Assembly (NCBI GenBank): GCA_053919585.1
Contig: CM132819.1
Length of the DNA: 64,000 nucleotides
From: Euprymna scolopes
Taxonomy: Eukaryota
Strand: one strand, 5' to 3'
The position numbers were made by a program, and so were the translations under genes. A model generated the notes under the pieces. It was not told the DNA's origin, searched no databases, and saw only the letters and a program-made list of their open reading frames with translations. Positions 9,832 to 58,190 of the stretch are shown one piece after another; position 1 is the stretch's first letter, and every line of letters starts with the position of its first letter.

Positions 9832-10143
9832 CATACAAGGCAGCTTCCTTCAGTCTTGACAAACTATGGATACCTACGGTAAAGGTACTGTAAGGATGCC
9901 TGCCTGTAAAATTTTTGTGAGAAGGTTTGCACAATCTCCAACCACACCTCCCCGAAGTCGGCGCTGTTGTATACCACTGGCAAGTGGAGGTTCAGAACGA
10001 CTGGAAACAATGCGGAGATAAACGGAGAGCACATACAGCGCCTAGAATTCCCAAATGGTCACGCATCCGGTACTCGCCAGGCTCAATGTTGCTTAACTTC
10101 GGTGATCTGACGAGAACCAGCGTATCAGTGTGATTATGCCGTA
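9832..10143 (-). mobile_element. 5S rRNA-headed SINE-like element (SINE3-type); 5S head at 10031-10143
   Basis: Minus strand reads tacggcataatcacactgatacgctggttctcgtcagatcaccgaagttaagcaacattgagcctggcgagtaccggatgcgtgaccatttgggaattctaggcgctgta, a near full-length diverged 5S rRNA. There is no oligo-T terminator, and it runs into a body shared with 50672-50838. Confidence 0.8.
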
Positions 10144-10382
10144 CATATATATGGCCTTAGCAATGTGAGCTTTATAAATCGATTTATGTTCTGATGTTTT
10201 TGGACACAGTTTTTGGAACTCGTCTTCTTAAAAATCCCGAATATATGAAGTACCTAGATTTTTTAATGTGAATAACGATATTACAGAAATCTAATTTCTC
10301 ACATTTATTAAAATATGCTCCGGTGTTAAATTAACATCTATCGAGATAAACTCTTAAAAGTTCGCCTATTCATAATATATAC

Positions 10383-10899
10383 ACGCAGGAACGATGTTCC
10401 AAATATGACTCCTACATGCTTTTTCTGCTCTAATAGATCAGACGGGAATGAAAATTAAATTCTTATGATGACTGGGCTTATGCATTTATGACCTGAAAGC
10501 CTCATCTCTCCGCTGCAGATATAGAGTTTGGGACTATAAGAAAGCAATCACTTTCATGGACATGCGCCAGAAGCAGAGATGCGTCATTTAATTCCTCATG
10601 CTAAAAAATTGAACCGATCAGCATTCACTAGTGTCTGTTTAGCATTACGAAGACGATGCAGACGTTAGCAGGTTCAGGAGATGGGTTCATCGATTTAAGA
10701 GTGGCGGCAAAGATGTGAGTGACAAAGCGACTTCCAAACTTTTACAACCGCGGCATCAATAGAGGCTGCCAAAAATACATTGAAATTGGTTGTTATGTAG
10801 AAAAATAAATTCTGGAGCACAAACTGTCGCTCTTTGTTTTCGTAGCTTTTTAATATTTTAGTTTTTGAGTTAAAAGTGTTCTATTTGGAACGACCTTCG
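10383..10899 (+). mobile_element. Internally deleted mariner transposon relic
   Basis: Broken transposase N-terminus MDMRQKQRCVI*FL...DVSRFRRWVHRFKSGGKDVSDK (from 10556) is joined to a C-terminal NFYNRGI...QKYIEIGCYVEK*. The right TIR is tatttggaacgaccttcg|TA and the left TIR remnant is gttccaaata. Confidence 0.8.
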
Positions 10900-12892
10900 T
10901 AGATATTAATATCTCTTTACTCCCATTCTCTCTCCCATATATGAAAAATTTGTTCCATATACGTAATTAAATTATACGCTTTTTCAAATAAGTTATCGTG
11001 TGTCTATTTATGGGAAAGGAGGGGTTATAAAATAGTCAATGTTGAAACTTTTTTTTTCATATAAATTTCAGAGAATACTAGAAAAATGCTTACAAGAGGG
11101 AAATAATAAGATTTTTATTTCTTCATTTTCTGCCGACGAAGAAATTTAATAACAATATAATAAAATTCATTTTATTTACCTAAAGCCCCCCCCCAAATCT
11201 AAAAAGAAATGTGAAAATAGAAAAAAAAAGTTTTTCGTCTTTTACATTTTTTTCTCTTCGTCATTTCAACGCGGAAATATAATTGAACCCTTGAAAGAGC
11301 CAGATGTTGACCGGAAGGGGAGGCAACATACGAATAATCGCAAAACTTGTGGGAGGTACAAAAAAAAATCCCTTAAAATGACAAACTATTTTATCAAAAT
11401 ATGCTTTTTCCTTATTCCTATTCGATTGTCGAGATTCCTTGATTTTTTCTACTCTTCAAAGAGTCTACATAAACGTACAACTGTTTTTCTTTTGGGGGAA
11501 CAGTAGTGAAAGCTTATTATTTACAAAACACTGCGTCGACGGCGGTTGGGGAGGACCGAGGCAACAACATATTTGGGACCCCGCTCTTTAGAATGGAAAC
11601 CACAAGCAAAACAAAGAGCAACTTATAAAAGAATGTGATAAACGATAAACTGAACATAAATTAGAACAGGACGTCAGAGAGGAAGAGGGTTGAGATATGG
11701 GGAAAGGAAGGACTGTTTGGTAGAGTTGAGGTCCAGACTGTCAACCCCCGTGTTTCAGAGACCAACTGACACTTTACATTTGAATCACGATCGTTACATT
11801 CGTTCAGGCAAATAAGTTTTTTAGGGCGTTCTTTTTCTCTAGGAATTTAATTTTTTCCCCCATTATAGACTAACAAAATAAACACACATTTTCCTGGTGT
11901 AAATAATTAGCTTGGGTATTTAGTTTTCTTCTACCGCAAGAACTGTGACACTAAGGTGCGAAAGTGGGATAGAAGCAGCCAGTACTCTAGAGAAGGAGCC
12001 CTCGGACTTTGCGAAAATGTCAGGGCAGCCCCGTCAGCATTCCCACTAGAGCGCCTCAGGCGATTAACAAAGAACTTGACCCTTTTCAAAGGGAAAAGGC
12101 AAGAAAATACGTGTTTAAATATTCCTTGGTTTTGGGATTGAATTATCTTAGAAACAAACTTCCATTTAATTAGCCGTAATCTGTAATTAACTTTATTTTA
12201 GTTTTTAAAAGTAAATTAATCTATAAAATGAGGTTGCTCATCTGGAATGTTTATTATCTTAGTTGATAGAAAATTACAAGCACCTCTGATATACTACATG
12301 CTTTGCAATAGTTATATAATATGAGCACACACACCTATACATACACACACACACACACATACATATATAGACACACACAAATTATTTTATTATGCATTAC
12401 ACATATTAAAGAGAAACCATATTTTCAACACAAATAGGCTATTGTTTAGAAAGACTGTTGGAGTCCATCTCGCAGATTTGGACAAGTTGCTTTTTAATGT
12501 GGGGAAAATACAGCTCATCAAAAAGCACTCTCAATTGAGACAGAATAATTGTTATAGTCTATAAGAATTTCTACTTTACTGATCGAGAACAGATAGCTTA
12601 AAAGGTGCTACAGATTACACCGAGCCAAATGTTTATATCTTTATATCTGAATTTTAATCAACACGTAGAGACAGAAAAGTGGGGCAAAACTTCTGTTCGA
12701 GGAATTATTTTTACCCATCTTGGGATGGGTATTATTCTAGTATATATAAGGTTAGTGGAAGAAAATAACTGAGAACTATGATGAAGTTCTCGATTATTAT
12801 GAAAATAATACAAGTAATATTTATTTATATATACAAAATATTGGTAGCGTTGGTACGAAATCTGAATTTGAAAAGGATAATAACAATGTTTG

Positions 12893-12944
<52 letters not shown>

Positions 12945-12947
<3 letters not shown>

Positions 12948-13375
12948 TGATGAGACAATTCCAATATTTTTCCCCGATTCCGATACAGTTACTGATTCCG
13001 TACTAAATTCTGAAAGCCCATACTATTACCGACTGATTCTTATTTATAAATCTCTAACGATTTTACTATAAAATAGTTATTTTGTCTCAATTACTGTAGA
13101 AACACATCTTAAATGTGCATGTATTTTCTCAAACGTAAATACACACTTGTGAAGAGGCGATCTAGAGATTTTAGCCTTACTGGAAGTTTAAATCAATAAA
13201 TATTTATGATTTTGATTTTTACTACAAGCAGTGGGAGATGTTTTATAAAAACAAAATCAAATAAAATAGATAAAGAAATCGGTTTTGGCATCAGAAAATA
13301 GGCTTAAATTTTCCTGATTCCAATACCCCAAAAAGCTCCGATTTTTCCGATTCCCGATTAATCGCCCCAACACTT
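12945..13375. mobile_element. hAT-type non-autonomous element (MITE) inserted in (TA)n
   Basis: The ends are CAGTGATGAGACAATT ... AATCGCCCCAACACTT (imperfect TIRs), with repeated subterminal CCGATT/CCGATA motifs. ATATATAT on both sides is compatible with an 8-bp TSD. Confidence 0.6.
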
Positions 13376-13538
13376 ATATATATATTCCTCGAGACATAGA
13401 ATGAGGAGATGTATTGTTAATGATTACAATATTTAAAGTTATCACAAGAGGATAAAGCGCTTACTATCGATTCATTTTTAACCTAATGCTTTACAAGTGA
13501 AGCTATAAAATAAAATAAAAACAAGCGAAGGTACTTAC

Positions 13539-14205
13539 TGACACATTCCTTGCCTTCAATACCCTGGAAACCTTGTAAACATTTGCAACCACCAAACGCG
13601 ATGTCCCATGTTCCGTCACTACGGCAAAGGTACGTTGGTTTAGTCTCTTGTATAGCATTGGGCACACATTCGCCCTGTTTCTGCACCAGCGATGAGGGCC
13701 GGTCACCCGTCGGAGTCTCCATGAAAAATGCATAGTTGATGGTGATGTTCGGACATGTCACATAGTAGATACGAACCGACAGCAAAGTGATACAAGCGCC
13801 AGTGTCCTGGAAGGCAAAGTAGACACCCTTGCGCTTAATAGTGACGTGCTTGGTTTCCATGTTGACCACAACATCCGTTGGCTGCACGTAGAGGCTGTCA
13901 GCGGCGATTGTGTCGATCTTCGTGTACACGTGTGGATCCCACGTCGGCATGTGATTGTTGGCAAAGTCGGACTCTGCCTCATAATAATAGAGATTAAACG
14001 TCTCCTTGCATTGCTGTAAGCTGCTCGGGTCGTTGTGTCGGATGCATTTGCGCATCGTGAAGCTCATCTCTATGTGCAGGCTTTTGGCGTCCCCTCGGTC
14101 TATGTAGGGCGTTCGTAACCAGTTGTTTATGTCCATAAAAGTCACATAACATGATGAATAGGCCTGAACTGTCTCACCAAGGTAACTGCTACTACCAAGT
14201 AACCA
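13539..14205 (-). CDS. Eph: Eph receptor tyrosine kinase, internal exon (exon 3 equivalent): most of the ephrin ligand-binding domain plus the Sushi-like Cys-rich region
   Basis: The translation has Eph motifs NNWLRT, FTMRKC, CKETFNLYYYEA, YTKIDTIAAD, GVYFAFQDTGACITLLSVRIYYVTCP, GECVPNA and YLCRSDGTW...GGCKCLQGF. The acceptor is a pyrimidine tract then ...gctgattgcag|TGG (AG at 14207-14206). The donor is GTC A|gtaagt (13538-13533). The exon is 667 nt with phase 0 start and phase 1 end, as in exon 3 of vertebrate Eph genes. Confidence 0.97.
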
Positions 14206-14549
14206 CTGCAATCAGCAGGAATCAGTCAGCCAAGTAAAAGAGAAAAAGGAAAAATAAAAACAGATTAATAAAACATCTTTGGTTGTTAAAACTTAAAAGC
14301 ATTTATCATAAACAGTTTCTTATATTCAAAAATAATAGTAAATTAAAATAGCACTAAACTGGATAAAATGTTAGAAATAATATCCATAATTTGAGCTTTA
14401 TCATTACGAATTAAATATTTACCCGGTATTTATTTATGAAAGAAATATATATTTATTTACAGATGACCCGAATAGCCAATCGATTTTCTCCATCTCTTCG
14501 GTACATCAAACAAGGTTTCAGATTTTTTTAGGGTAAAAATTGGTAATTG

Positions 14550-15005
14550 TTATTTGGATTATTCAGACTACTATTCTCATCTTGGTGACGTTTTTGCCGA
14601 TGTAACCTTCGAACTTCTCCAAGCACATTTTGTCAAACTTTAACATATTTTGTATTAAACTTGAGATTATTTATGTTGAACACTGGCATTTTAAACTGAA
14701 ACGTTCGTTTAATTCATCGAATTTGGATTATTACACAATTCTGGAAACAGTACAAAATTTTGAACTAAATCCTTTATTTAAAATAAATTGATACTTCTAC
14801 CTGGTCACGGCTAACGATATAACATAATAGCGTTTATTCGATAAATGGATCAGCTCAAAATCACGTACATGAAATAAACATTTGTCAGTTGGACTAAAAA
14901 TGTTTCTAGGTTAAAAAAGATGCACCTTGAGAAGGCTGGAGGTTTCATCCACAGAAGATTTGTTAACATACAATTAAGATGAGCATAGTAGTCCAAATAT
15001 TCAAT
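14550..15005. mobile_element. Degenerate repeat with inverted ends, Penelope-like pLTR-type (decayed hammerhead motifs)
   Basis: 14553-14628 (gactactattctcatctt...gatgtaaccttcgaacttctccaag) is homologous to the reverse complement of 14921-15005 (gactactatgctcatctt...gatgaaacctccagccttctcaagg). Related segments lie at 21690-21885 and 54228-54440. Confidence 0.5.
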
Positions 15006-15649
15006 ATAATTGTCTAAAAATACTCGTGTAGCAATCATAATGGTCGTATAGGTGTAGATAATAACAGTTTAGACAATCGTCCACATGGACGTTAGCAAAA
15101 GAAATAGATACAAACAGCAGTATCAAGAAGAAGCCAACAGAAAAGAAACGAAGAGATTAATAGTGCGAACAGGAAGGAGTTAAAAAAACAAACTAGAGTA
15201 GTATATTAAACCTATACGTATATACCACATTGACTGCAGGACTAGTATTATTAAACTGCGATACTATTCAGGAGAGTTGGAGAAAGACAATTATAGTTTA
15301 GAAGGGCCTTCCATAAAAAAAGTTATTTTTGTGAATAAATATAGAATATGTGTATTTTATTAAAAAGAAAAAAAATATTAAGAAATAAAATCACTCAAAT
15401 ATTGGGTGAATAATGTATGGTGACTATGAGGTTCAACTATTTCTGGACTATGTATAGCCGATTCCAAAATTACACCCATTCGGCCATGCGTGCACCATCG
15501 TAACCAGTATGGAAGTCGGAAGTGAGCAGATACAAAGTAAATTGTATGCAAATCCAGTCTATAGTTTGTTTTAGCTAACTTCTTTTCCTAAAAAATGCTT
15601 AATTTTGATTCGCTTGACTTAATTCGTATATCCTTGCATGTTAAGCATA

Positions 15650-15880
15650 AAATGTAATTAGATTGAGTGCCCTCTAAAATATTTTACCTTGACGGGAATC
15701 ATCTTTAAATAATTGCCACGTAAAAAGAGGGGTAACTATTCGTCCACGCATTGTTACACCCCTATAAAAGGGGACGAAAAGATAATTAAAAAAAAAAATT
15801 AAAGATGAAAAAGTTAAAAGAAAAATGCAAACACATGCAATTAATTATATTCCCGGACAATGTCGGAAAAGAACAGCTAG
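15650..15880 (+). mobile_element. Helitron-like element 3' part
   Basis: Ends ccggacaatgtcgg (hairpin) aaaagaacagCTAG|T. Homologous to 6979-7192 in the opposite orientation. Confidence 0.6.
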
Positions 15881-17641
15881 TAATAAACGAGACAGTCGTT
15901 GGTAGACAAAAACATTTAAATTAGATTTCTCTTTACGGTTAGATCACCGTATAATATACTGGTATATACGTATTTATATTTGCTATCATTTAGCTTCGAA
16001 TAGGCAATTTCAGGTGCTATTAACTTTGTACAATTAAGTTATATATAGTCCACCTAGTCAATAGCAGATTGGCACAAATATTGAACAATATTCACCCAAT
16101 TAGAAGTCGACTTTCATAAGTACGTCTGAAAAATCTAACATTTTCCCGCAGGTATATTACGAGAAAATAAATTCCTACTTTTATAAAGACAGGAAATGTT
16201 ATTAAAAATAAGTTGTAAGGAATGCGTGATCTTGTTAAATTAATGATCGGCTCAAATAATAGGACATTCTTTCTGAAAATGAAAGACAAACGGGGCTATA
16301 TATATATAGGCATTCTAATTTTGCAAATATACGAAACTTAAGAGACAAACATATTTCATTACATCGTTGAACAATGTGCAACACAATGGTAATATATAAG
16401 GGGAAATATCAAGAAAAAATAGTGCAAAAGGTGACAACACAGAGAACAAAGGAAAACAAATTGAAATAAAACAGAAATGAATTTCATTTCTCTCTCTTTC
16501 AGAATGCATTATTTAACACCTTTTATATGTTCAAGGCAGAATGAAAATTCTGGAGAAATTATGAGATTTTAAGAACTTGAATGACGTCACAAATCTGAAA
16601 TTTAAAATAAAAATGATGCGATGCAAAGACATAGTACTTGATAAATAATATCATTGAACATAGCATTTAAATTCAAAGAGCGAAAAATTCAAAAGCAGAA
16701 CAGTTAAATTAAAAGTATTTTCAAATCAAAAACATGAAAGACCATTTTGTCACATTTTGTAGTTTGTAATCCATCATCTAAAACGAATCGTTCTGGTCAA
16801 GCGCTGACGGTGACCATCCGGAAAATCTAATCTCGTTAGGTCTCCATGCACTACCATGCTAACTTCATGCACGAATAACTTCATTCAATAATACGCATCT
16901 AGAAACATAAGCTTAGAATCTTGGAAATAAAAAGAAATAAACTCACAACCATTTTTTCTTTTTAAATCTCGGAACCGTTTACATCGTATCAATGAACATA
17001 TACATGAATACATAATAGGACTCGTTTTGTTTGTTGTAGTAATCGTCATTGAAATATTCAATATGTTCAAATACGACACTAATTCCTGGACAAGGGCAGA
17101 TAACCAATAAGTTATGCTGGTTTAATCTTTGGAGATAAATCAAGAAAACAATTGCATTCCGATATTCATACATTGGATATTTTAGTATAGTATTTGACAC
17201 GTGACATGTTAAGCTTTACATTAATGGAATATTGATAATCGGTTTTATTTGTATTAGGGGTGTATATTCTCGGTCAAAAATTATTCTTCGCCAATGTTTG
17301 CAGGGACTTTTATATTATAAAATCTGAATGAGTAATAAAAAATGTGACAAAAGAAAAGTAAAATAGAATCCTTAAAAAATAAAACAAAAAATACACAACG
17401 TATACAATTGTATAGAAAATCGAAAGACAAAATTTGAATAAATTTTGTGTTCTCAGTTTTCATAAATACTTGAAATCGATTCGTTTGGCAGATTTGTTTA
17501 TTCATATGAAAATATGTAATAGTAAATAGTTTTTTTCCTGTACATTTATTTATTGGTCTCTGCGATTCAAACAATACGCTGAGTGTATGGCTATAAAGTA
17601 TCTTACTTTATAAAATAAAACAATGTTTCTTTAAATCTTAG

Positions 17642-17692
<51 letters not shown>

Positions 17693-20189
17693 AATACATA
17701 TTTACTGAATAGATGAAAGCCTTATAAAAGTAAATGAACAGTTAAAATTGTTTAAAAAAAATAAAAACGCAAGATTTAAACTAACAAAAACATCTTCATC
17801 GTGAGACTGTATATTAAACCAAACATTTCCAAGCGATATGAAAATTCCAATTTACCAATATTCGCATGGTCACTACGAGTTATCTCGTAACAAATAACGA
17901 ACGTTTATAAAATCTTATAATTATGTTTTTGCTATACAAGTGTGCTCTTCTTTCTAAAAGCGGCCATTAAAATATACTGGAGAACTCATTTTAACTGAAA
18001 CATGCCAGCCCCAGAAAGGAAAACGAATTCACGAATATGGCATAACTGAAGTCACTAGATGTGGAATCGGAATAATTTACGGTAACGGATTAAATAACGT
18101 TCCGGTTTAAAATGCCCGGCAATTTCTACGCGTAGGAAGTAAACTAATACGAAAAAAGCCAAAAGCAGTGAGAACGATATACATTTTAAATTATTAGCTA
18201 TATATTTTCCCCTAACGATAATATACGAGGTATAGAATGATACTAGGTCACAGGTTAGTATTAAATCCATAAACGCAGGATGAATGGTTAAATTTGAAAA
18301 AACAAAATTTTTAATATTACTGACGAATTGACCGTTGCATTTCCTCTGAAGAATTTTACGAATACTTGAAACCGGTTAAATTAAAAACAGAATAAGAACC
18401 AATTTATAAACGCATCAATGATTGTAATAAACATATTTGGCTGTATTTCTAAACTATCTATTATAGTTGGAAAGCTAATTAAAACGTCACTGTCTATTGT
18501 TTCGGTCTATTAAGATGAAGTGAAAAAGGGAATCGAAATGTTGAAAGCAGACAGCGTCTTTGTCATACCGAGTTACGGTGAAACTATATGTTCAGCTTGA
18601 CTGAGCGGAAGTTATGTCAGTTGGAAGATCTATGGAAATAAGTAAAACTGGTTTGTATTCACGTTGTTCATTACTCCTGCAGAAAACTTGTGTTACAAAA
18701 ATTAGTGAATGACAACATTTTTTTCTATTTCAGCACAGGATTCAATTCAATGAAACTAATATCAATTATTTCAGTTTATAAAGAACAATACATATTAAAA
18801 TCCATGAGTATATATGTATAGTCGATCACTTTCTTGATTGTTGTGAGCGATAGCTTTTGTCCTAAAAAAGCTATTGATTCTGGCTCTTAAGTTCTTTTGT
18901 AGCCGATCTTACAGTAACACAAAATGAAATTCTATTGAATTTATCTCAGAAAAGAGTCGAGATAATTTCTGTGCGGACGATATTTTTAGCAAACTACCTT
19001 TGGAACGCAATTTTTCTGGATTACAGTTATCTAAGCCGATCTCAGTGATTAGTCAAACGGGTCATGTTATTTGTTTTAGTATATATCCAAATATTACAAG
19101 TCTAGTGTAAAAGTCACAATTGTCATTATTCTTTACCATTTCAGCCACACTCGTATGCATATAAACAGTTAAAAGAACGCTGTTTAATCTATACATGCAC
19201 AGAAATGTGTAGAAGGGCAAGGCCCGCCAAGTTTAAATGTTTCAATGTATACCTCTCAGCAACTATTTTCCCGGCAATATACCGAATAAAACGTTACATA
19301 GGAGATTTGAACGTGTAAAACAAATCCCATATATATCAAGTTTCAAGTTTGTAGAAAAAAAGTAAAAAGGGGTTTGGTAGAGACCATTCTTCCTACAGCC
19401 AAACAAAGTTACTTATATATTAATTTAAACGCCTTAGCAGCCCATTTTCTGCAGATTCAAACAAGCTCAATATAATAAATAAATCAACGAATAACTCATT
19501 TTTCTAGTGTATATATAAAATTACGGCATGATCAAATCTAAACACAGGTTCCTGTTATATTAACGAACATTAGAAAACCTGAATCTTTGACACTATCAAA
19601 ATAGATTACTATTTAAGAATATCAGATATGCTCTCCGGATATTTCCAGATTGTTTTCGACAGTCCTGGATTTCTCTTTGCTACTACAATCAAGCAGTACT
19701 GACTCGAGAGAGGAATTGTTGGCTTTGTGGACCCCTGCCTCACGATTACATGCGCAGATACCTTTATAGTTGGTATTCATGTTATGCCAAAACTGAACTG
19801 AGTCATGCCTAGCCATGAAGCAAGAAATCTAGTAGAATAGAGTTCCACATCAGTGAAAATATTGCAAATAGAAAAGGAAAGATAATTGATAGGGGGATTG
19901 CTTTGCTATGATTAGATAGAGTTCATTGTTCTTTTGTAAAATATATATTGAATCTGTCAGCGAGAACGTTGCTGCAAAAAAAAAAAAATGTGGGGTAGGC
20001 CATAAATCAATGGCAATGGTGACTTGTACATGTATACGTAATGTTTGGAAAAAAATTGGAACTGGGCAGACCTAAGTGGACTTAAGTGCCGTTCTACCTA
20101 TCCGCACATACATTTATAGGTTAACCAGCGTTATTTTTTAAATTTTATATACGTATAGACGTCGCTTAGCGATATAGAATTAGGATAGA

Positions 20190-21885: not shown

Positions 21886-22351
21886 GGAGAATATCGATTT
21901 TTCCAAATATTTTAACCATTGCGCCACGGATTCTTGCGGACAATCATGTTAACACACCCTTTCTCGCCAGATCAACGAAGTAACGTTGAGTCTGGCCAGT
22001 ACCAGCTGAGTGACTATTTGGGCAGACAAGGCACTGAATATAACGCGCGAGACATAGACATTTCCAGGTTTGTATATGTGCGCGCATTTTCATTCACCTG
22101 GAGAGATGCACCCCCCAGTCTTCGTTAAGACATGCATCTAAGAGAAGGATACTTCTCATGTAACAAACCTTAGGTCTACTGTATGCTGTTTTGTGGCAGC
22201 CATTGCACCGACAAAGATTAGCAGTTGTACAAAAAATAATAAAAGTATGGCTGGTTTTACATAAAACATTTCCCACTATAACCAAATCATCCGTGTGAAT
22301 TTCCAAACAACTTCTTGTGGCGGGAGATCAGATTGAAATCGACGGACGAGG

Positions 22352-22395
<44 letters not shown>

Positions 22396-35375: not shown

Positions 35376-35930
35376 CCCAAGGATGGAGTATTGTTGCCAC
35401 ATCTGGGAAGGAGCTGCTAAAAAGACCTTATGCATTGACAGAGTTCAAAATAGACTTTGTAGCCTTGTAAGGGATGCCCCTTTTATCTTCCTTGCAACCT
35501 CGTTCTTACAGCCTGTCTCTACGTTATCCTTTTTTTCATGGCAAGTGCTCATCTGAGCTCCAATCTATCGTCTCCCCTCGACAAACTTCCACGAGACACA
35601 CGCGTCTAGCTGAAACTACTATCAATAATTTCCCCAACTCTTTATACGTACCTAAAACAAAGTATATTCCATGAACAAAGCTTCTTTCTTAGAACTCGAC
35701 ACCTATGGAACTGTTTTCCCTCTGCCTGCTTTCCAGCTGACCAGAATATGGTCGTCTTCAAGTCCAACGAAAACAAGTTCTTAATGAGCCGTTCCTCTTA
35801 ATCTAATTTAACAAATTTACGCGTCTAACGATTCTTATGATATTGTCCCTTTGATTATTGTTCACTCTTTAACCCTTATTCTCGAATAACCACTGGGCCT
35901 TGGTAAGTGGTGAATTATGTAAAAAAAAAA
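35376..35930 (+). mobile_element. 5'-truncated non-LTR retrotransposon (CR1/L2-group-like LINE) 3' end with poly-A
   Basis: Frameshifted ORF2 C-terminal motifs PRMEYCCHIWEGA...IDRVQNRL, FFHGKCSSEL...TRHTR and SFFLRTRHLWNCFPSACFP...FKS are followed by a 3' UTR and A10 at 35921-35930. Confidence 0.8.
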
Positions 35931-39932: not shown

Positions 39933-40110
39933 TATATGCAAACACCCATTTAAAAGCATATCGTCCCCACAAAACATTACCCCGGGTTTAGTGCCCAGAG
40001 ACCTTATCGCCAGATATTTTGTAAAAATCCAGTTTTCTCAGAAAAATCGTGGGTGTAAGACAAAGGTACCTTAGATTTGGGCTCTGGAAAGATAAAGATA
40101 TCATGCATCC

Positions 40111-40173
<63 letters not shown>

Positions 40174-40889
40174 TGCACACAGCAATATCTTTAGCTCTGT
40201 CTATTATTGGTGATGACAGCTGACTTAAAAATCTTAGAAAAAAACCAGTGAAGCAGCAAATTTATTCCGCACTGTTATTTGCCCAGAAAAGCCAAGAACG
40301 TGGAACAGGGGTGGAAAGAGGGAGAGAATACACCCCCCCAACACACGAAAGAAAAAAAAACAAACAAAATAAAACTAGGAGAGAACAAAGAGGTATGGCA
40401 ATGATTATATTCTTCCTTATGAAAAAATTAGCCCTCTACAAAAAAACAATAAATAAATAAAAATAAAAGTTTGGGACAGACTTTTGAAGAAAATTAGATG
40501 AAATGCCACTCGGCAGGAATAAAATAAAATAAAATGAATGGTTTCTCCAATGAGAATAAAACATTCCAATGACAAACTTATAAACAAAGGGTTTCCCTCA
40601 TCTTGCTGTTAAGAATTTAAATTACAGCTGATATGGTTGTATGTCAAACAATTCATATCTCTAAATGCTTTATCATATAAAGTGCCGTTGTTGTTGTGCA
40701 TGTATGCCCAGCTAAAGTAAAAACTGTTACTCAAGCTTTCATAAAGTGTGTACATTTTTTGATCGCCACTGGATAAATATCTAAAATTAAAAAAAAAAGT
40801 TCTTTGGGGATTTCATCTGACCGGGGGGGGGGGGCTCGCTTTTTTCAGCAATTTCCGATGTTAACTTATGTAATGGGCAGGTAAATGAG

Positions 40890-42009: not shown

Positions 42010-42043
<34 letters not shown>

Positions 42044-42044
<1 letters not shown>

Positions 42045-45576: not shown

Positions 45577-45792
45577 TTTTCTGATAAACACCGCTTGTCA
45601 ATTTCAGAAGTCAGAAGCTGCCATCAAGTAGATATCAGGCTTAACTGAGACAACGATGCTGTAAAACACACACACACACGTGTGTGTGTGTGTGTGTGTG
45701 TGTTTTACAGCATCGTTGTCTCAGTTAAGCCTGATATCTACTTGATGGCAGCTTCTGACTTCTGAAATTGACAAGCGGTGTTTATCAGAAAA
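45577..45792. repeat. Perfect inverted repeat: 90-bp arms around a (CA)n/(TG)n centre
   Basis: 45577-45666 is the exact reverse complement of 45703-45792. The spacer cacac...cacgtgtg...tg is itself partly self-complementary. Confidence 0.97.
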
Positions 45793-47900: not shown

Positions 47901-48121
47901 NNNNNNNNNNNNNNNNNNNNNNNNNNNNNNNNNNNNNNNNNNNNNNNNNNNNNNNNNNNNNNNNNNNNNNNNNNNNNNNNNNNNNNNNNNNNNNNNNNNN
48001 NNNNNNNNNNNNNNNNNNNNNNNNNNNNNNNNNNNNNNNNNNNNNNNNNNNNNNNNNNNNNNNNNNNNNNNNNNNNNNNNNNNNNNNNNNNNNNNNNNNN
48101 NNNNNNNNNNNNNNNNNNNNN
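47901..48121. other. Assembly gap (N run)
   Basis: Run of n. Confidence 1.
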
Positions 48122-48228: not shown

Positions 48229-48500
48229 CATTGGTGATGCAAGTTATAACCACACTTTGCTTAGCTTGCCACCCAGAATGCAACGTTACTTTCATGAAAA
48301 ACAGACACCGCATCACCTCGGTGTACAACATGCACCAGCAGTCTATGATACAACGTGAGAAGCAGTGAGACCGAACATCATGGTAAGCCCATTTTCTTTT
48401 AAACAAAGAGGATGCTGATCTCCGTTATTGTCACTTTCATGATCATACTTGATGCAAGATTACGCACATGCAAGAAAAAATTCAAGTTGCATCACCAATG
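48229..48500. repeat. 17-bp inverted repeat pair, possible decayed DNA-transposon relic
   Basis: cattggtgatgcaagtt (48229-48245) and aagttgcatcaccaatg (48484-48500), one mismatch. Extra ttgcatca/tgatgcaa motifs lie nearby. Confidence 0.35.
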
Positions 48501-50387: not shown

Positions 50388-50424
<37 letters not shown>

Positions 50425-50671
50425 TTAGACAGCATTTTTTTAATTAAATAAGTTTTTATTTTAGAAAGTTTTTACTTTTTCAATGTCCAAAAAGTACTTA
50501 GTAATACCATTGGCATCCGGAAGAAGCACATATTATGCTTGCAAGAGTTAGGAGTGCATGAAGTTCAAAGAACTTTTGCCATTACGAACAGAGCATTACT
50601 GACCAAAGAAAGAATGCATCATATGTACAACAGATGGAAGTGAAACCTAACTAGTGAGAGATTTAGTCAAT

Positions 50672-50916
50672 GATACAGCCGATGCCTCCATTCAGTCTGT
50701 AGCGGCATTTGTGTGTGTAATTGTGAAGCAAGGGTTGCGAAATCCTCAACCACACCTCTCCTGAATCGGCACTATTCGAGTTCAGTGTCAAGGAAAAGTC
50801 CAGGATCACTGAAAACAATGCTGAGATTAGCGGAGAGCACATACAACACGGGGAATGACCGGATCAATGCTGCTTAACTTTGGTGATCCAGCGGAAACCG
50901 GTGAGTCAATGTGATT
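50672..50916 (-). mobile_element. Second copy of the 5S-headed SINE-like element (C-box region deleted)
   Basis: The 5S part tcaatgctgcttaactttggtgatcc...aaccggtg joins the same body as copy 1 through cggagagcacatac. Body landmarks are aaccacacctc and aaacaatgc.gagat. Confidence 0.75.
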
Positions 50917-52593
50917 AAAATGGATAAGTAATAAGAGTCCTGATACAATGGATGTGCAATAAGAGTCCTTAAGATAGGCTTAAGTCTGATGATCTGAGAG
51001 GAAGATTTAATCTAGAAAGTCTAGAAAAGGAGAGCATAAGGGAACTGATAATTTGTATATGATCTAAACTACAGATACGCACACATATGTATAATTATAC
51101 ACATGGTTTGCACACATACACATCTTTACACATGTTTAAACAAGGATGTATACATACGAATATAGAGATATGTGTGTATGTATTTAGACAGCTGATAGTG
51201 GACTTCAATGAAATATTCCAATATCTACTGATCTCATATATAGCTCCAGAAAAAGTATCTCTTGGTTTGAGATTCATGCTATAAAATAAAAAAATAAAAA
51301 CATACACTTTCTCTTACACTCTTATTGTATAGATATTTTTACATTTTTTTTTTTTTTTTACATTTTTGAACAGAAATGTATGGAGTTGAACTTTTTAATA
51401 TTGTGTTTTACAGAAAAAAGACCACTGTAAAAAAAAATCTTTAAACCAAAATGAAAACTTCCTCGTAGATATGTATAAGTCAGTTGAAGACATTTTCAAA
51501 CACCAGGAATCTACTTTTTTTTTTAGATAGAGAGAGAACAGGACGAGATGATAATGAAGCTTGTTAGCAGTAAAGTGTGAAATAAATAAAACAAAGAAAA
51601 AAAAGCATCATTTAAATATATAGTAACATACACCCCCTGCTAATAGGCAAGCACACAAAGTACAGATGTAATATTTAACCCTGGAAATGAACTTGAAGTG
51701 ATACTGGGTTTTGTGCAATACCATGTGACTGTCTAACAAGACGAGGGATAGGTAATGATGATATCAAAAAACAAACTACAGAAATGAAATCTTGCATTTT
51801 TTAGTCTTATTCAAAAAAAAGTTGTCATTTATTGTTACTTAGCTTGAAACATTCGCCACATTGGAGAGTCATAATAAAGCGAAACAACTATAAGGCATTT
51901 TTTTATTCTGTCTTTTTAATGACACATTCTAATATTGTATGCAGAATGAATGTCCAAGCTAGAAGGGGAAACAACTAAAAATCAAACTAGAGTGATATGT
52001 TTACCATTTCCTCTTCCAACCCTGATGATCCTGGAGAAAGAGATTGATTTATGTCCGGGAAACTTTTTGGAATCGGATCACGCTTTCAATATTTTTTCAA
52101 GTGAAGGGGAGTTATGCATTTGACAGCAAAAGCAGGAATTTATGTTGACCCTTCATCTATGGCCATCACCCCGCCGACCCTTACTGACTGCTACTTGATC
52201 TCATCTCATTTTTTTTTAAGGTATCAGCTAGCAGGTTTTATTTCAAGATATTTATTAACTGCAATATTATTAGTATCGCTCATTTCATAAATAATTCAAA
52301 CGCGTATCCTTACATTTATTATAATTTTTTTACATTATAACTCCTGCAGCTATCATATTCTCTCAATCCAATAAGCATTATACACTTATCTCGTCATACA
52401 GAAAATTTAGTGCATTTGTAACCGAACCTATTTTAAAAGAAAATGTTATAAAAAAATTGTATAGATTAAACCACTCATACTCAATGATTTTATACATTGA
52501 CTGACTTATTGTTTTGAGTTCTTCCGGTTTCAAACAACCATTCTGCAGAAATTTTCTGCAAAGCATTAAAGGTTTTTTTTAATGCAGTCAAAT

Positions 52594-52652
<59 letters not shown>

Positions 52653-54227
52653 AAATAAGCTTTGAATAATAAATAAATAGAAAATAAAGAATGCAGTTTA
52701 GATTCCCGGAAGGTAAAAATATTAATTTTAACCTACGCAGACCAAGCACCTAAATAATCCGATTTCTAAAAAGTTTATAATGACCAAAGAGAATTCATTT
52801 ATATATGAATGAAAAAAGAAAAAAAAAGGCCTTAACTAAAATTGTTAAATCGAAATAGACTTAGCACTTGCATAAGCCGCTTTCGCAAAAGTCTTCAATT
52901 TTAAAACAGATTTTAACTATATAAGGATGAAGAAAGAAAACTTTAATTAAAATTTTGTAAATAAAAAACGGCGATCATCAGCTGCGTACCATGTAGCCGT
53001 TTCAGAGATTCAATAACAGGGCATTTAAAATATATATATATATATATATTGGTAAAATGAATTTTTTTAACAGAACAGTTTTGCAACCTTTTTGTTAGAT
53101 TAAAATCAAGATTAAATTTATGCTTATAATTCTTACATCAATTTTGATCAAAATTCATTACAGGATTAAGATTATAAAATATAAAAAAAATTAAAGCTTA
53201 AGGAGTTTTAAGAAATTGAAATTCACTAAATCTTACTTAAACGTGACTAATACCTATGTTCATATTTGATATATTTACATTTTCAAATGGAAGACCGTAT
53301 CCCATAAAAGCGCTTCAAATAAACTGAGATTTGGGGAATATTCATGAATTTAAAATTTCATAAAAATCAGTGGTATCTGAATTCTCCCAGAGGGCTCAGA
53401 TTTTAATCCCTTTTTATAAAAGGAAATACATTTTAATACATCTCACATAGCCATGCAGTGCTGCTCCAAAATTCATAAGGATGAGTTAATTTGTCTAGAA
53501 ATGAACCCTGTACATACAAATATATGAACATACCTAATTATCTATTTATGTATATCTATATATATTTTACTTATTTACATACTATAAAGCTTACTTCAAG
53601 TGTATTTTGTTTGCGGTTGAATCAACGAGATTAGCAATTTTCATTGTGTTCATGTGTAGATGCCAACTAGAATCTCAAGTGTCGTCAAGCATTATTATTA
53701 TTTGTTGTTTCGTCTTTTGGGGATGATGCAAGACAAAACAAAAACAGATAAGACATTGACAAACATATGGACACAAGCAAATAAGACAAACATTTTTTTC
53801 ATAAACTTCAAATAAAAACACAAAATTATAACAAAAAAAGAAAATCACAAAAAAATATAAATAAAATACTCCTTAAAAGCATTTATTTATTAAAAGTCAA
53901 CTTGATTAAAAATAGAACAATTAAGATGGTTTTCTTCATCCAATTCTAATTCTGATTTCCGTTTAATATTACCAACAGTGACATCCATTGGATATACGTA
54001 TACTTGCAATGTTTGTCCTCCTTTTTGTTATGTCTCTCTTCGCTTGGCTTCTTTCTGACACTTCCTGTTTTTGTTTTACCATCGAAGTGCTTGTAGAGGT
54101 TTGTCTTAGCATCATTTAAATATAATTTTTATAGTCTATATCCTTATTGTCACTGTTGATTTAGTATTATGAATCAAGGCAGCTATGTTTAAAAGATATG
54201 GGGAAACGTAGGATAGCTTGCATTATT

Positions 54228-54440
54228 TGGATTAGAATTCTCATCAGGTTGTTTCGTCTGAACCTCCAACCCTTTTCAGGTGAATAGTTTTAATTGTGGA
54301 AACCGTTAAGATTACCAAGTTCAGAAAAAAACATCCTCCTGAATACGATTAGAGGTTAACTCAGTTGAAACGTTTTAAAAATTATAAATTATCAAAAACG
54401 AGAATAGTAATCTGAATGATCCAGATTCTTAATTCTCATC
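54228..54440. mobile_element. Further copy of the Penelope-like inverted-end repeat
   Basis: The left arm attctcatc...gtttcgtctgaacctccaacccttttcaggtg and the right arm cctgaata...gaggtt...gaaacg...gagaatagtaatctgaat mirror the arms of 14550-15005. Confidence 0.45.
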
Positions 54441-55072
54441 TTAAAATATCCGAAACTTAAATAGGCCAAGGTAATTATAAAAATGTTGACTTTTCATAAA
54501 TAAATACTTATAAAGTTTGGTAGGTTGTTGTTTCAGAATTGGTGATTTCTAATTATTTTGGATAATTTAAATGTTTTTATACGATTGTTTTTATTCAAAT
54601 GTTTTGGTTTCACCATTCTGCAGCCTTCTTCGTGTTTATAATTGTGTTATGCAGCATATCGTCTACGAACCTCATTTGGCAGGTATTTTCAGATAAACAT
54701 AATTTAGTGCATTTAATCACGTAATACTTAAAACAAATGAACAATACATTACAAAGCTTTTAAAGAAATACTTTGCATAATTACTGTAGAGTCATCTAAA
54801 GCGAACAATTCAGGGTTTAGGAGTATATATGGCTTTAACGCAAGTTTGTGAAAGTTTTATCAGTATTTCGTTCTAATATTTCTTTAGAATAAACAATGGA
54901 GAATGAAACTAATTCATTGACGTATTTTAATATCAGCTGGTATATTTCGAGTAATTTTCCGTTAAATAATTCCTTTTACTATCAGAGTAATAATAGGAAT
55001 AATAATAAATAAAAATAAAGGAGTCGAACAGAGTCGATGGTAATCAGAAGACTAAATTTTCATTATATTACT

Positions 55073-55105
<33 letters not shown>

Positions 55106-55129
55106 CACAAGCATTCTCCAAGCTTACGT

Positions 55130-55270
55130 CACTTAGCCTTGATTCTCACCTAATAATACTGAGCATTTAACAAAGGAGCGTCAAGTACCATATTTTCAGT
55201 ATCTGGTAGGACTAATGAGGATTGAACACGGGTCTCCCGCCTCATTAGTGAACACTAAACATTATGCCAA
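55130..55270 (-). mobile_element. tRNA-derived SINE fragment
   Basis: The minus-strand head is TGGCATAATGT (A box) ...gggagacccgtGTTCAATCC (B box), followed by a non-tRNA body aaaatatggtacttgacgctcc...ctcagtattatt. Confidence 0.65.
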
Positions 55271-57319
55271 ATGAGGTAATAGGAATGATATAATGAAGAG
55301 TCACTTATAGAAGGCTGAAGATGGATTTTGCTGAAGAGGTAAATATAAAATAGTTTAGGTTTTATAATAAAGATTTTGGAGTTGTGTTCTGCTTTTTTAT
55401 TGTTTTTTTTAAATTTTATTTTGAAGTAAATTATAATTGTTTTTTTTTTAATTTTCTTAATATTTTTAAAGTGTATCTTTAATTGTGCCCGTTGTGCTGG
55501 GATATATATTTGAAGCCTGTGGAAAGCATTGAAAAGAGCAAGAAAATAAAAAGAAATCGTTTAAGAAAAGAGTCAGTAGGAATATGTTATAATTTATTAA
55601 TGTTTCTCCCACCTGAAAGGTCTTTTTTGTAGTGTGAAGTTTTTTTTCACAAGTTTCTGTTCCTTACGTCTTGGGGGAACAAATAAAGTGGATGAAAATA
55701 TGAGCGCGTTAGCAAGAGAAAGAGAGAGAAAAGCAGTATTTATATTTTTAAAAGGGTTAAAATAAAAGAAACTTCACATAAAAAAAGACAAGGAAGGCGG
55801 GAAAGAAGTGCAGAATTTTAGAGAACTGACCCATTCAGATGCAATAATGCTGCCGACGCTGCTGATACCCGTTGCATATAATAAAATTCATCATAGTGGA
55901 GGAATGGAATTAAGTATAAGATATCAATGAAGAAATATCTCCAAATATCAGTTTCTTTAGAATTTAATTGATTGATCAGATTCCCGTGATTTTGGCAAAA
56001 GTGTAAATAATTCAAGTTCTTTATATCTTCAAATATTTATTTGTTGCATTTATTTGCTGGCTTTTTAGAAGAAAATGGTCTGTTTTTGGCTTTGCAGAAC
56101 ATAAGTTTTGCAAAGAAATAAAAAATAACATGAATGTTTTTGTGCATTTAAGATCAGACCGCCAATATTTTTAAACAGTCTGATTTGGTAGCAACATAAA
56201 GTTTTTGAGAGTATTTAAAGCGGTCAAATTATGGTGAAAATCCCCATTTAAAAATTCAAACATATATTTGGGAAAATACAGACAATTACTATTTAATATT
56301 TGTATCAAATTACTTTATTGTCTGTAGATGTCTATCATAATTCACATAAGGTTATATATCATTAAATATTCATTTTAATCTTACGGGGTCATAAATGTGG
56401 TATAAACCTTGTTTCAGGAATTTTTATGCCTGTTCTACGATATACATTTTTAGTTAAATATATGAATTATTAACCTTATCACAAAAATGTTGCTCTAGAA
56501 GCAGGACTTTCTTATGTCTCTAACCAAATAGAATACATTAAAAGAGAAAAGAGGTTGGGTAATCGTTTTGGGTTGGTTTCATAGCAACAAACAAATCCTT
56601 TCACTTTGAGAAGCGAGAATAAATAAAGAGGAAAAAATGATGAAGCAGACAATTTGATTTAGCCGAAACAGCAGACTCACCCTAACCCCATCCGATATTG
56701 ACCTTATATTATCCTCCAGCCACACCTGCTTTTTATTTTTTTTTCCTCCTCTGCTAGCAATGCCTCACTCGAGAAGCAGATTCCTTAACCAAACCCTGCC
56801 GATATGAATTGCTGCGGGAGAGGGCGAAAGGAAGAAAAAATATTGACAGCTATGTGAAAAGAGCGATTGGTTAGACAGGGTTTCATCCTAACACCAGAAA
56901 CCTTTCTACTGCCAAACGAAAACAGGTTTAGGCTTTAGAGCAGTTTTCTTTCTCTTCATATTTTTAAGGGTATTTTTTTCTGCTAAACTAGCAATGATTT
57001 ATGCGTGTATTCGTCAGAGTTTTCAGCATGCCAAAACAGAAAGCTGAAAAATCTAGGCCTATGTCACCCATTAGTTTACGAATCTCAATGAATGTGGGAA
57101 AGAATGCTCAATGTTTAAATCCTAAAGCCAGAGGTTGCAAAAAAAAAAGAAAAAGCTTTCATATACAAATAGAAACGCATGAAAAAAAAAACTGATTTTA
57201 CATTTTCTTTGGAGAGTTTCGCCAGCTAATATAAAAGAATTTTCCCTCGAAAGTTATAAATTGTAAAGGGTTTCTCTAATGCTGACATTTTTGCAAGGAC
57301 ATTTCACCATGCTCCTAAA

Positions 57320-57417
57320 TACAGCACTTGGTATTCTTATTTGAGAATACCAAGTGCTGTACCGGCTCAAGGTTGCTAAACTTTAGGGATAACGTGAACC
57401 AGTGCTCATGTGGTTAT
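57320..57417 (-). pseudogene. 5S rRNA-derived fragment with an internal fold-back
   Basis: tacagcacttggtattc (5S 3' end, reverse complement) and ccggctcaaggttgctaaacttt...gaaccagtg...gtggttat (5S 5' half). Confidence 0.6.
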
Positions 57418-58094
57418 AAAGTTTACTGAAATAATGTGCACTAATATAAAAAATGCAAATAGTAGGATTTTAAAAACTGGTTAAGTTAATAAAATTGCAG
57501 AGGCGATGTTGGAACAATTCATTTTCAAATGGGTAATGTCGGAAGTTATCCTTAGGGACACCAGTTAATTTTCTATTATCAGACGATATCAAATGTAAAG
57601 AAAAACACATGTAGAAGGTGATAACATCCGTACAGATGCAAATAGTTGGTTTAGTTATGATGAACTTAGAAATGGGCCAGGTTCAGCTGCAGTCAACAGA
57701 TAGAAAACATTGGAGAAAGACAAGAGGAAAGAAGAGAGGGACCTTTTTATTTCACGCTTATATAATTGTGTTTTGAAGGCCAACAATTGATAAGTAGGGG
57801 TCAGTGGTAAGAGGAAAGATCCTTTGAAACATGCTCATCGTTTAACCCATTTTAGTACCACAAAACCCAAATGCTAATACCATTAAACCGAATTTAATTA
57901 AATGAAAAACTGCAAATAATCTTGGCATGGTTTCACCATGATTGGGAATAGGATTTCAGCAAGGGAAGCGTTTTTTTTCTTTGTTTTTCTTTTTTGCTGT
58001 GAACACCTGTGGGAATTAGCAAGATATACTGATATATTTGCTACAGACATCATCATGGCTGTATTTGTTGGCAGGAAGATTTCGTCGTCCTTCC

Positions 58095-58190
58095 ACATAC
58101 AGCACCTGGTATTTTGAAATTACCATGAAGTTGGTACTAACCAGGCTAAACATCACTTAACCTCGGTGAGCTAACAGGAACCTATGTATT
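58095..58190 (-). pseudogene. 5S rRNA-derived fragment (SINE head or pseudogene)
   Basis: acatacagcacctggtatt...gtactaaccaggct...cttaacctcggtga...ggaacc is the reverse complement of diverged 5S. It has the same acatacagc end as copy 1. Confidence 0.65.

What the first reader, a model, noticed from the sequence alone, without database searches (positions are those of the whole stretch)
9832..58190. A 5S rRNA-derived SINE-like family, several copies in one gene
Seen: four diverged 5S sequences (10031-10143, 50839-50916, 57320-57417, 58095-58190) and a possible fifth remnant near 975-1000, all on the minus strand. Two continue through an identical junction (cggagagcacatac on +) into a shared 120-200 nt non-5S body and lack the oligo-T terminator, so they are not simple 5S pseudogenes. 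Known: 5S-headed SINEs (SINE3 class, e.g. zebrafish SINE3 and AmnSINE1) are much rarer than tRNA-derived SINEs. Inference: this may be an undescribed SINE3 family. The 58095 copy has a different downstream sequence and may be a second subfamily.
Basis: partly seen in the sequence, partly recalled or inferred. Interest (0 to 1): 0.7.

Follow-up and report, generated by a model that had tools for sequence, protein, structure and literature searches.

The report
Abundant 5S-headed SINE families, six copies
The window holds six decayed copies of three very abundant short jumping elements whose front end is a modified 5S ribosomal RNA gene. This is a known kind of element (SINE3 type), found here in a large AT-rich animal genome of a group (if it is a squid or cuttlefish, as other scan notes say) that is published as nearly SINE-free.

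Summary
The "fifth remnant" at 975-1000 is not supported.

The copies are SINEs, not 5S pseudogenes or orphons:
- The bodies do not match the spacers of the true 5S rDNA array (contig C18, 270-bp units).
- Full copies recur on at least 45 contigs. Exact 19-mers occur 2,074 times (tail) and 5,211 times (body), against 0 for reversed controls.
- Many copies have 8-13 bp target-site duplications.

Three families with unrelated bodies are present:
- A, about 294 nt, three copies.
- B, about 419 nt with a (TA)n tail, one copy.
- C-like, two copies.

The three heads share ten derived states against the true 5S genes, so one ancestral head was joined to different bodies. Insertions are enriched in (TA)n. 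Model hits cover about 1-2.5% of the DNA sampled.

Not shown: the partner LINE, transcription, the conserved-domain class, and whether Repbase or Dfam already list these families. The scan found the same families before in other windows of this genome.

Verdict: new member of a known kind, modest interest.

The parts
9843..10146 (-). Copy A1: full-length family-A SINE. The 5S-derived head is 10030-10146 and the body and tail are 9843-10029. It carries an 11-nt insertion relative to other copies. K2P distance to the family consensus is 0.12. No clear TSD.
   Evidence: Rfam 58.7 bits. Profile E 3.5e-94, model positions 2-293. 82-85% identical over 304 nt to 40 scored genomic copies. Divergence.
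50697..50917 (-). Copy A2: family A, model positions 11-259. It has a 27-nt deletion inside the head and lacks the 3' end. K2P 0.31.
   Evidence: Junction motif exact at 50831-50844.
19522..19797 (+). Copy A3: family A, model positions 4-287, very decayed (66% identity, K2P 0.48).
   Evidence: Profile E 3.6e-23. Divergence.
21937..22355 (+). Copy B1: family B, about 419 nt. It has a 5S-derived head (about 21937-22045), then a body unrelated to family A that ends ...GACGGACGAGGTCAT. K2P 0.18.
   Evidence: 6,864 first-look candidates; 40 scored copies are 76-79% identical over the whole query. Alignment. Consensus match over positions 2-409. Sequence read.
22356..22392 (+). (TA)18 microsatellite tail of copy B1.
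   Evidence: 8 of 13 family-B copies carry (TA)n directly after the last base, even where the upstream flank is unique sequence (p 2e-9 against a 3.4% background).
58062..58193 (-). Copy C1: family-C-like. It has the 5S-derived head plus the first 30 nt or so of the family-C body (junction GTATGTGGAAGGACGACG). K2P 0.35. Further downstream it resembles only a few other copies (L033, L038, L032).
   Evidence: Family-C profile E 1.2e-24, model positions 18-148..
57284..57418 (-). Copy C2: family-C-like, head plus about 30 nt of body. K2P 0.33. It is not an LTR-like twin of C1: the two share only 46 nt, inside the 5S part.
   Evidence: Family-C profile E 5.8e-20. Pairwise comparison.
10023..10036 (+). 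Head-body junction motif CGGAGAGCACATAC of family A. A second exact copy lies at 50831-50844.
   Evidence: 2 matches, 0 expected from 100 shuffles.
13483..14211 (-). Context: exon of an Eph receptor gene (ligand-binding domain plus cysteine-rich domain). Copies on the minus strand are sense to this gene.
   Evidence: Pfam Ephrin_lbd E 1.6e-46 and Ephrin_CRD E 3.1e-17.
975..1000 (-). Not confirmed.
   Evidence: No profile hit at E<=10. Only scattered short matches to the 5S box region.
47901..48121 (.). N run inside the finding's span. No SINE copy lies within 2.5 kb. Continuity is unknown and irrelevant to the copies.
9476..9744 (.). N run 99 nt downstream of copy A1. Left unread: a locus cut from the genome showed letters there in one printout, and they were not used.

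Best explanation
The stretches are old copies of three families of non-autonomous retroposons (SINEs of the 5S-headed, SINE3 type).

Structure: each element is a nearly complete, modified 5S rRNA gene of about 115 nt. It is fused to a family-specific body of 155-300 nt that is unrelated to 5S rDNA. It ends in a 3' stem-loop followed by a short T-rich or (TA)n tail.

Likely mechanism:
1. RNA polymerase III starts from the 5S-type internal promoter (box A, intermediate element, box C) kept in the head.
2. It reads through the body, which has no run of four or more T.
3. It stops in the T run at or just after the 3' end.
4. The reverse transcriptase of an unidentified LINE recognises the 3' stem-loop and tail and copies the RNA into a nicked target. 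The target is preferentially TA-rich or (TA)n DNA, and the insertion leaves 8-13 bp target-site duplications.

The three heads descend from one already modified 5S copy that was joined to different bodies. Amplification ran over a long time, and no near-identical copies remain.

Shown: the structure, the 5S origin, independence from the rDNA spacer, copy number, TSDs, the (TA)n bias, common descent of the heads and the ages of the copies. Inferred: Pol III transcription, the termination point, LINE dependence and the template switch.
For: 5S origin:
- Rfam scores are 58.7 bits for the window copy and 46-87 bits for younger copies. True genes score 99.8-119 bits, and the gathering score is 38.
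- Heads are 85-87% identical to the true 5S over positions 4-113, and 85-87% across the promoter region 45-97.

Not rDNA:
- The true array lies at C18:127.4-128.2 Mb in 270-bp units.
- Bodies A and B have no match in 12 rDNA loci, apart from one 17-nt chance hit.

Family and copy number:
- First-look candidates number 7,024 (A) and 6,864 (B). All 40 scored hits are full-length, on many contigs.
- Exact 19-mers: tail 2,074 and body 5,211, with 0 for reversed controls.
- Profile hits cover 2.5% of the window and 1.2% of 144 kb of distal flanks.

Retroposition:
- Unique-sequence TSDs of 8-13 bp occur in at least 10 family-A copies and in one family-B copy.
- (TA)5+ lies next to 23-29% of family-A ends, against 3.4% background (p 2e-5 and 2e-7). 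Family B has a (TA)n tail in 8 of 13 copies.
- T4+ occurs within 15 nt of the family-A 3' end in 31% of copies, against 14.5% (p 0.009).

Other points:
- No T4+ run occurs inside any consensus, and 3' hairpins are predicted.
- Ten shared derived states, two of them deletions, occur in heads A, B and C against both true 5S variants.
- The three bodies are unrelated to each other.
- Ages: K2P 0.017-0.08 for the best family-A copies, 0.08-0.48 for unselected ones. The best pairwise identity of a near-consensus copy is 95-97%.
Against: - No partner LINE was found.
- The T-run enrichment at the family-A 3' end is modest, about twofold.
- Part of the (TA)n association could be microsatellite growth after insertion rather than target choice.
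- The window copies themselves show no clear TSDs, because they are too decayed.
- Copy-number extrapolations rest on about 208 kb, and the flanks lie near other SINEs, which may bias them upward.
- The shared derived states of the heads could in principle come from an unsampled 5S gene variant.
Confidence: 0.9

Rival explanations
1. The biology is as described, but the families are already catalogued (Repbase, Dfam or SINEBase entries for squid or cuttlefish genomes), so nothing here is new.
For: The A. dux genome paper already noted about 24,000 5S-derived loci as 'likely SINEs' (PMC6962438). A 5S-headed SINE ('Ante') is published for a scaphopod mollusc (PMC5804259). Repeat libraries are often deposited without a paper.
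Against: Full-text searches found no description of a cephalopod 5S-headed SINE. Recent genome papers state that Decapodiformes have 'almost no SINEs', or less than 1% of TE content (PMC13218726; PMC8967140). That suggests the libraries in use do not classify these elements as SINEs.
Confidence: 0.35
2. Dispersed 5S pseudogenes or orphons: pieces of the 5S rDNA array (gene plus spacer) scattered by DNA-level events or by simple retro-pseudogene formation.
For: The heads span nearly the whole 5S sequence. The first bases after the family-A head (TTTCC) resemble the immediate 3' flank of the true gene.
Against: The bodies have no match to the spacers. The same 175-300 nt body follows the head in thousands of copies. 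TSDs flank whole elements. The heads share ten changes not seen in the array genes.
Confidence: 0.02
3. 5S-bearing LTR elements (Cassandra or Ajax type TRIMs): the two same-strand copies at 57.3 kb and 58.1 kb would be the LTRs of one small LTR retrotransposon.
For: Two 5S-like stretches lie in direct orientation about 780 bp apart. TRIMs with 5S promoters in their LTRs are known in plants and nemerteans (PMC10886601).
Against: The two regions share only 46 nt (74% identity), inside the 5S part. Similarity does not extend on either side. Elsewhere the family occurs as single units with TSDs.
Confidence: 0.02
4. Chance resemblance or low-complexity artefact for the weaker copies (57319-57418, 19522-19797, 975-1000).
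For: Rfam does not report them even at E<=10. Identities are 66-75%.
Against: Family profiles give E 5.8e-20 for 57284-57418 and 3.6e-23 for 19522-19797, with the match running through head and body in register. Only 975-1000 fails.
Confidence: 0.03

Closest known systems
SINE3 of zebrafish and the 5S-headed DeuSINEs (AmnSINE1, SINE3_IP, OS-SINE1); Kapitonov & Jurka 2003, Nishihara et al. 2006, as cited in PMC5786205 and PMC4824008
   Same: The head is derived from 5S rRNA and keeps the internal Pol III promoter region. A non-5S body follows. The elements are dispersed, high in copy number and flanked by TSDs.
   Different: The host is an invertebrate. The heads derive from this host's own 5S type. 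Three unrelated bodies are used. The tails are T-rich or (TA)n. Presence of the Deu domain, which defines that vertebrate superfamily, could not be tested because no reference sequence was on hand.
Lepidopteran SINE3 families (HaSE3, PxSE4/5, SINE3-1_LyPhl and others; PMC3272025, PMC10886601)
   Same: These are invertebrate 5S-headed SINEs. They show that SINE3 arose several times, and that the same tail can be shared between tRNA-headed and 5S-headed families.
   Different: HaSE3 has a recognised RTE-derived 3' end. No LINE match was found here. The families are unrelated in sequence as far as could be tested.
'Ante' SINE of the scaphopod Antalis entalis (PMC5804259)
   Same: A molluscan SINE with a 5S RNA-derived head.
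   Different: Ante carries CORE and V domains. The one CORE/Ceph motif available from text (CCTTGGGAAAG, PMC5786205) is absent from A, B and C at up to 2 mismatches. The full domains were not testable.
Ceph-SINEs of squids and cuttlefish (Akasaki et al. 2010, cited in PMC4824008 and PMC5786205)
   Same: The host group would be the same if the genome is a decapodiform. Both are SINEs.
   Different: Ceph-SINEs are tRNA-headed and defined by the Ceph domain. Here the heads are 5S-derived and the Ceph/CORE motif is absent.
The roughly 24,000 '5S rRNA-derived loci' reported in the Architeuthis dux genome (PMC6962438)
   Same: Probably the same phenomenon. Younger SINE heads here pass Rfam's 5S threshold at 46-87 bits, so an Rfam-based annotation would count them as 5S loci.
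   Different: That paper gives only a count and the remark 'likely SINEs'. It reports no structure, families, bodies, TSDs or target preference.

Membership tests
SINE3 (5S rRNA-headed SINE) | 5' head derived from 5S rRNA, keeping the internal Pol III control region (box A, IE, box C) | tested here: met
   Rfam RF00001 scores 58.7 bits in the window and 46-87 bits in younger copies. Identity to the host's true 5S is 85-87% overall and 85-87% over positions 45-97.
SINE3 (5S rRNA-headed SINE) | Non-5S body that is not rDNA spacer | tested here: met
   Bodies A and B do not match 12 rDNA loci. Bodies A, B and C are unrelated to each other.
SINE3 (5S rRNA-headed SINE) | Short, non-coding, dispersed, high copy number | tested here: met
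   Consensus lengths are 294, 419 and about 286 nt. First-look candidates number 7,024 and 6,864. Exact 19-mers occur 2,074 and 5,211 times, against 0 for controls. Hits lie on contigs C1-C45.
SINE3 (5S rRNA-headed SINE) | Target-site duplications from LINE-type insertion | tested here: met
   TSDs of 8-13 bp in unique sequence occur in L003, L004, L007, L008, L009, L017, L020, L029 and others, and in L052 for family B. None is recognisable for the window copies.
SINE3 (5S rRNA-headed SINE) | 3' tail shared with a partner LINE | tested here: inconclusive
   No tail-only match occurs in the window or in 77 loci. Region 35800-35930 scores no better than shuffles. No further genome letters could be fetched.
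SINE3 (5S rRNA-headed SINE) | Transcription by RNA polymerase III | not tested
The only indirect evidence is that no T4+ run lies inside any consensus, and that T runs are enriched about twofold just after the family-A 3' end.
DeuSINE superfamily (AmnSINE1 / zebrafish SINE3) | Deu (or Nin) central domain | not testable with these tools
   No reference sequence of the domain is available in the tools or in the held paper texts.
Ceph-SINE / CORE-SINE | tRNA-derived head and Ceph/CORE central domain (shared motif CCTTGGGAAAG, PMC5786205) | tested here: not met
   The heads are 5S-derived. The motif is absent from consensus A, B and C on both strands at up to 2 mismatches. Only this short motif could be tested.
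5S orphon / retro-pseudogene | 5S sequence followed by rDNA spacer or by a poly(A) or oligo-T end, without a shared foreign body | tested here: not met
   a fixed junction leads into a shared body, and there is no spacer match.
Cassandra / Ajax type TRIM | 5S-like sequence inside two LTRs that flank a short internal region | tested here: not met
   The only candidate pair (57.3 kb and 58.1 kb) shares just 46 nt.

The most novel reading that the evidence does not exclude
5S-headed SINEs make up about 1% or more of a decapodiform cephalopod genome (of the order of 10^5 copies). They would then be the 'missing' SINE complement of a lineage whose genome papers report almost no SINEs, presumably hidden among unclassified repeats or counted as 5S loci. 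They form one superfamily defined by a single derived 5S head that was recombined with at least three unrelated bodies. Their unidentified LINE partner prefers (TA)n microsatellites.
Probability: 0.35. Interest if true: 0.45.

Novelty: new member of a known kind. Interest (0 to 1): 0.3.

Why it matters
5S-headed SINEs are a known but much rarer class than tRNA-headed SINEs, so the kind of element is not new. The interest lies in annotation and evolution.

If this 5.9-Gb genome is a squid or cuttlefish, elements covering roughly 1-2.5% of the sampled DNA conflict with published statements. Those papers say Decapodiformes have almost no SINEs and that SINE expansion is specific to octopuses (PMC13218726, PMC8967140).

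The result would also explain the tens of thousands of "5S rRNA" loci reported for the giant squid (PMC6962438). Heads that pass Rfam's 5S threshold will inflate rRNA gene counts.

The single derived head joined to three unrelated bodies is a clean example of module shuffling in SINEs. The (TA)n bias points to a LINE with an unusual target preference that is worth identifying.

Nothing suggests a role for these copies in the Eph receptor gene. Their number in the window is what the genome-wide density predicts.

Tried and rejected
1. Orphon reading: rejected, because the bodies are absent from the rDNA spacers.
2. LTR/TRIM reading for the 57k/58k pair: rejected.
4. Tail-only matches that would mark a partner LINE: none in the window or the 77 loci. 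The exact tail 19-mer is rarer than the body 19-mer (2,074 against 5,211), so no more abundant element shares that exact tail.
5. Ceph/CORE motif: absent. The Deu, Nin, V and Meta domains could not be tested, because no sequences are held.
6. Two metagenome scans with conserved 22-mer and 25-mer motifs: blank.
8. The protein atlas confirmed the Eph exon but gave no useful taxon. The organism is therefore not verified by me.
9. The microRNA-like Rfam hits at E<=10 are (TA)n and low-complexity hairpins far below their thresholds.
10. One printout of a locus cut from the genome showed letters where the window has N (part of 9476-9744). I did not read, use or search them.
Full report
**Observation.** Rfam at its gathering score reports a single 5S match in the window, 10030-10146 on the minus strand (58.7 bits, full model). 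The permissive scan adds no other 5S match.

A self-comparison with the element at 9745-10200 found further partial copies. A whole-genome search showed that the first 304 nt of that element recur at 82-85% identity in all 40 scored hits. These were drawn from 7,024 first-look candidates and lie on many contigs. The window is C37:21948001-22012000 of a 5.9-Gb assembly in 925 contigs.

A profile built from 29 of those copies finds six places in the window:
- 9843-10145(-), E 3.5e-94, full length
- 50697-50917(-), E 3.5e-38
- 19522-19797(+), E 3.6e-23
- 21939-22041(+), E 1.2e-20, head only
- 58094-58193(-), E 4.9e-13, head only
- 57319-57418(-), E 1.7e-5, head only

The junction CGGAGAGCACATAC is exact at 10023-10036 and 50831-50844, with none expected by chance. 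The stretch at 975-1000 is not detected and shows only a loose resemblance.

The N run at 47901-48121 lies 2.6 kb from the nearest copy and has ordinary flanks. Continuity across it cannot be judged, and no copy depends on it.

**Three families.**
- *Family A.* The consensus is 294 nt: a head of about 117 nt, then a body ending ...GTCAAGACTGAAGGAAGCC. The window holds three copies: A1 at 9843-10146, A2 at 50697-50917 and A3 at 19522-19797.
- *Family B.* The plus-strand head at 21.9 kb continues into a different body. A genome search gave 6,864 first-look candidates, with 40 scored copies matching the whole query. The alignment defines a family of about 419 nt ending ...GACGGGAGAGTCCAT followed by (TA)n. 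The window copy is 21937-22355 with (TA)18 at 22356-22392.
- *Family C.* The heads at 58.1 kb and 57.3 kb run into a third junction (GTATGTAGGAGGACGTCGAC in the consensus). This junction is shared with a group of loci from which I built a family-C model of about 286 nt. With that model the two window copies reach E 1.2e-24 (58062-58193) and 5.8e-20 (57284-57418), both ending about 30 nt into the body. Beyond that point the 58k copy resembles only a few other loci.

Bodies A, B and C show no similarity to each other.

**Not rDNA.** The true 5S genes score 105-119 bits. They sit in a tandem array at C18:127.4-128.2 Mb with a 270-bp unit, plus a variant on C5. SINE heads are 85-87% identical to them over positions 4-113. 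Bodies A and B have no match in 12 rDNA loci of about 3 kb each, apart from one 17-nt chance hit.

**Retroposition hallmarks.**
- Unique-sequence target-site duplications of 8-13 bp flank many family-A copies, for example L003, L004, L007, L008, L009, L017, L020 and L029. One family-B copy, L052, also has one.
- Between the last base of family A and the downstream TSD there is often a T run of 3-14 nt. T4+ lies within 15 nt in 11 of 35 copies, against 14.5% in control windows (p 0.009).
- No consensus contains a run of four or more T, and each ends in a predicted hairpin.
- (TA)5+ lies next to 8 of 35 downstream ends and 10 of 35 upstream ends of family A, against a background of 3.4% (p 2e-5 and 2e-7).
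- Family B carries (TA)n directly after its last base in 8 of 13 copies, even where the upstream flank is unique. There it is a true tail.

**Heads.** Aligned with both true 5S variants, heads A, B and C share ten derived states, including two single-base deletions. The old window copies carry them too. This points to one ancestral, already modified 5S-derived head that was later joined to unrelated bodies. It argues against three separate captures of the 5S gene. An unsampled 5S gene variant with these states is the alternative.

The promoter region (positions 45-97) is 85-87% identical to the true gene in all three families. The 5' part is 75-81% identical in all three. The 3' part is 73% identical in A and B and 91% in C. 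In family A the 5' and 3' ends have changed together, so that helix I still pairs (Rfam alignment; alignment).

**Abundance and age.**
- The exact 19-mers occur 2,074 times (tail A) and 5,211 times (body A), with 0 for the reversed controls.
- None of nine unselected family-A copies keeps the tail 19-mer, and two of nine keep the body 19-mer. Total copies are therefore many times these counts.
- Profile hits cover 2.5% of the window and 1.2% of 144 kb of distal flanks. That extrapolates to a few hundred thousand pieces. This is a rough figure from about 208 kb, some of it near other SINEs.
- K2P distance to consensus is 0.017-0.08 for the best family-A copies and 0.08-0.48 for unselected ones.
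- The window copies are old: A1 0.12, A2 0.31, A3 0.48, B1 0.18, C-like 0.33-0.35.
- A near-consensus copy finds no partner above 97% identity, so there is no sign of very recent activity.

Six copies in 64 kb is what the genome-wide density predicts. It says nothing special about the host gene.

**Context.** One exon of an Eph receptor (ligand-binding and cysteine-rich domains) lies at 13483-14211(-), so minus-strand copies are sense to it. No other exon was recognised among the longer ORFs. "Several copies in one gene" is therefore plausible but not shown.

**Comparison with what is known.** 5S-headed SINEs (SINE3) are known from vertebrates and lepidopterans and arose several times (PMC5786205, PMC10886601). 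A scaphopod mollusc SINE, Ante, has a 5S-derived head (PMC5804259). The giant squid genome paper reports about 24,000 5S-derived loci as "likely SINEs" without describing them (PMC6962438). Younger heads here pass Rfam's 5S threshold (46-87 bits), which would produce exactly such counts.

Recent papers state that Decapodiformes have almost no SINEs (PMC13218726; PMC8967140). Other notes of this scan call the genome cephalopod-type. I can only say that its size, its 45 or more large contigs and its 32% G+C fit that. I did not verify the organism.

The scan has already found and followed up the same 5S-headed families in other windows of this genome. My tests agree with those notes on reality, abundance, multiple families and the (TA)n bias.

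**Limits.**
- The partner LINE was not identified.
- Transcription was not tested.
- Dfam, Repbase and SINEBase are not available, and of the conserved domains only one short Ceph/CORE motif could be tested; it is absent.
- Two metagenome scans were blank.
- One printout of a locus cut from the genome showed letters where the window has N (part of 9476-9744). They were not used.

**Verdict.** These are real SINE3-type retroposons. The window holds three families and six old copies. They are a new member of a known kind and already met elsewhere in this scan. Their interest is modest and mainly concerns annotation.

Noticed in passing
G000 C18:127.42-128.24 Mb (loci L067-L077); C5:158595083-158595201 (L066): The true 5S rDNA is a tandem array of 270-bp units spread over about 0.8 Mb on one contig. 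A slightly different single 5S copy on C5 scores best of all (119 bits).
   Followed up: partly
L050:850-2260: A nest of SINEs. A family-A copy is split by an insertion of about 340 nt (850-1005 and 1348-1481). It is followed directly by a family-B copy (about 1457-1955) and another family-A copy (1984-2260).
   Followed up: no
L008:2708-2836: A family-A copy with a large internal deletion: model positions 2-54 are joined directly to 219-294.
   Followed up: no
L012, about 20 nt upstream of the copy at 1500-1793: A partial duplicate of the first 19 nt or so of the head (TGTACGGCATAATCACGTC) sits just upstream of a full family-A copy. L020 has (CA)n(TA)n between the upstream TSD and the 5' end. 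These may be untemplated or slipped 5' junctions.
   Followed up: no
window, whole: (TA)5+ runs are frequent: 33 runs, 1.6% of the window. They produce many sub-threshold microRNA-like Rfam hits, for example at 40106-40190 and 45640-45731.
   Followed up: partly
window 13483-14211 (-): An exon encoding the Eph receptor ligand-binding and cysteine-rich domains (Pfam E 1.6e-46 and 3.1e-17).
   Followed up: partly
window 9476-9744: This N run is masked in the window but not in the locus cut from the genome (L001). The letters that appeared in one printout were not used.
   Followed up: no
family C consensus, about positions 240-251, against the family A 3' end: Family C contains GGAGGAAGCCGG internally, which resembles the last bases of family A (GAAGGAAGCC). 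This may be chance or a shared tail fragment.
   Followed up: no
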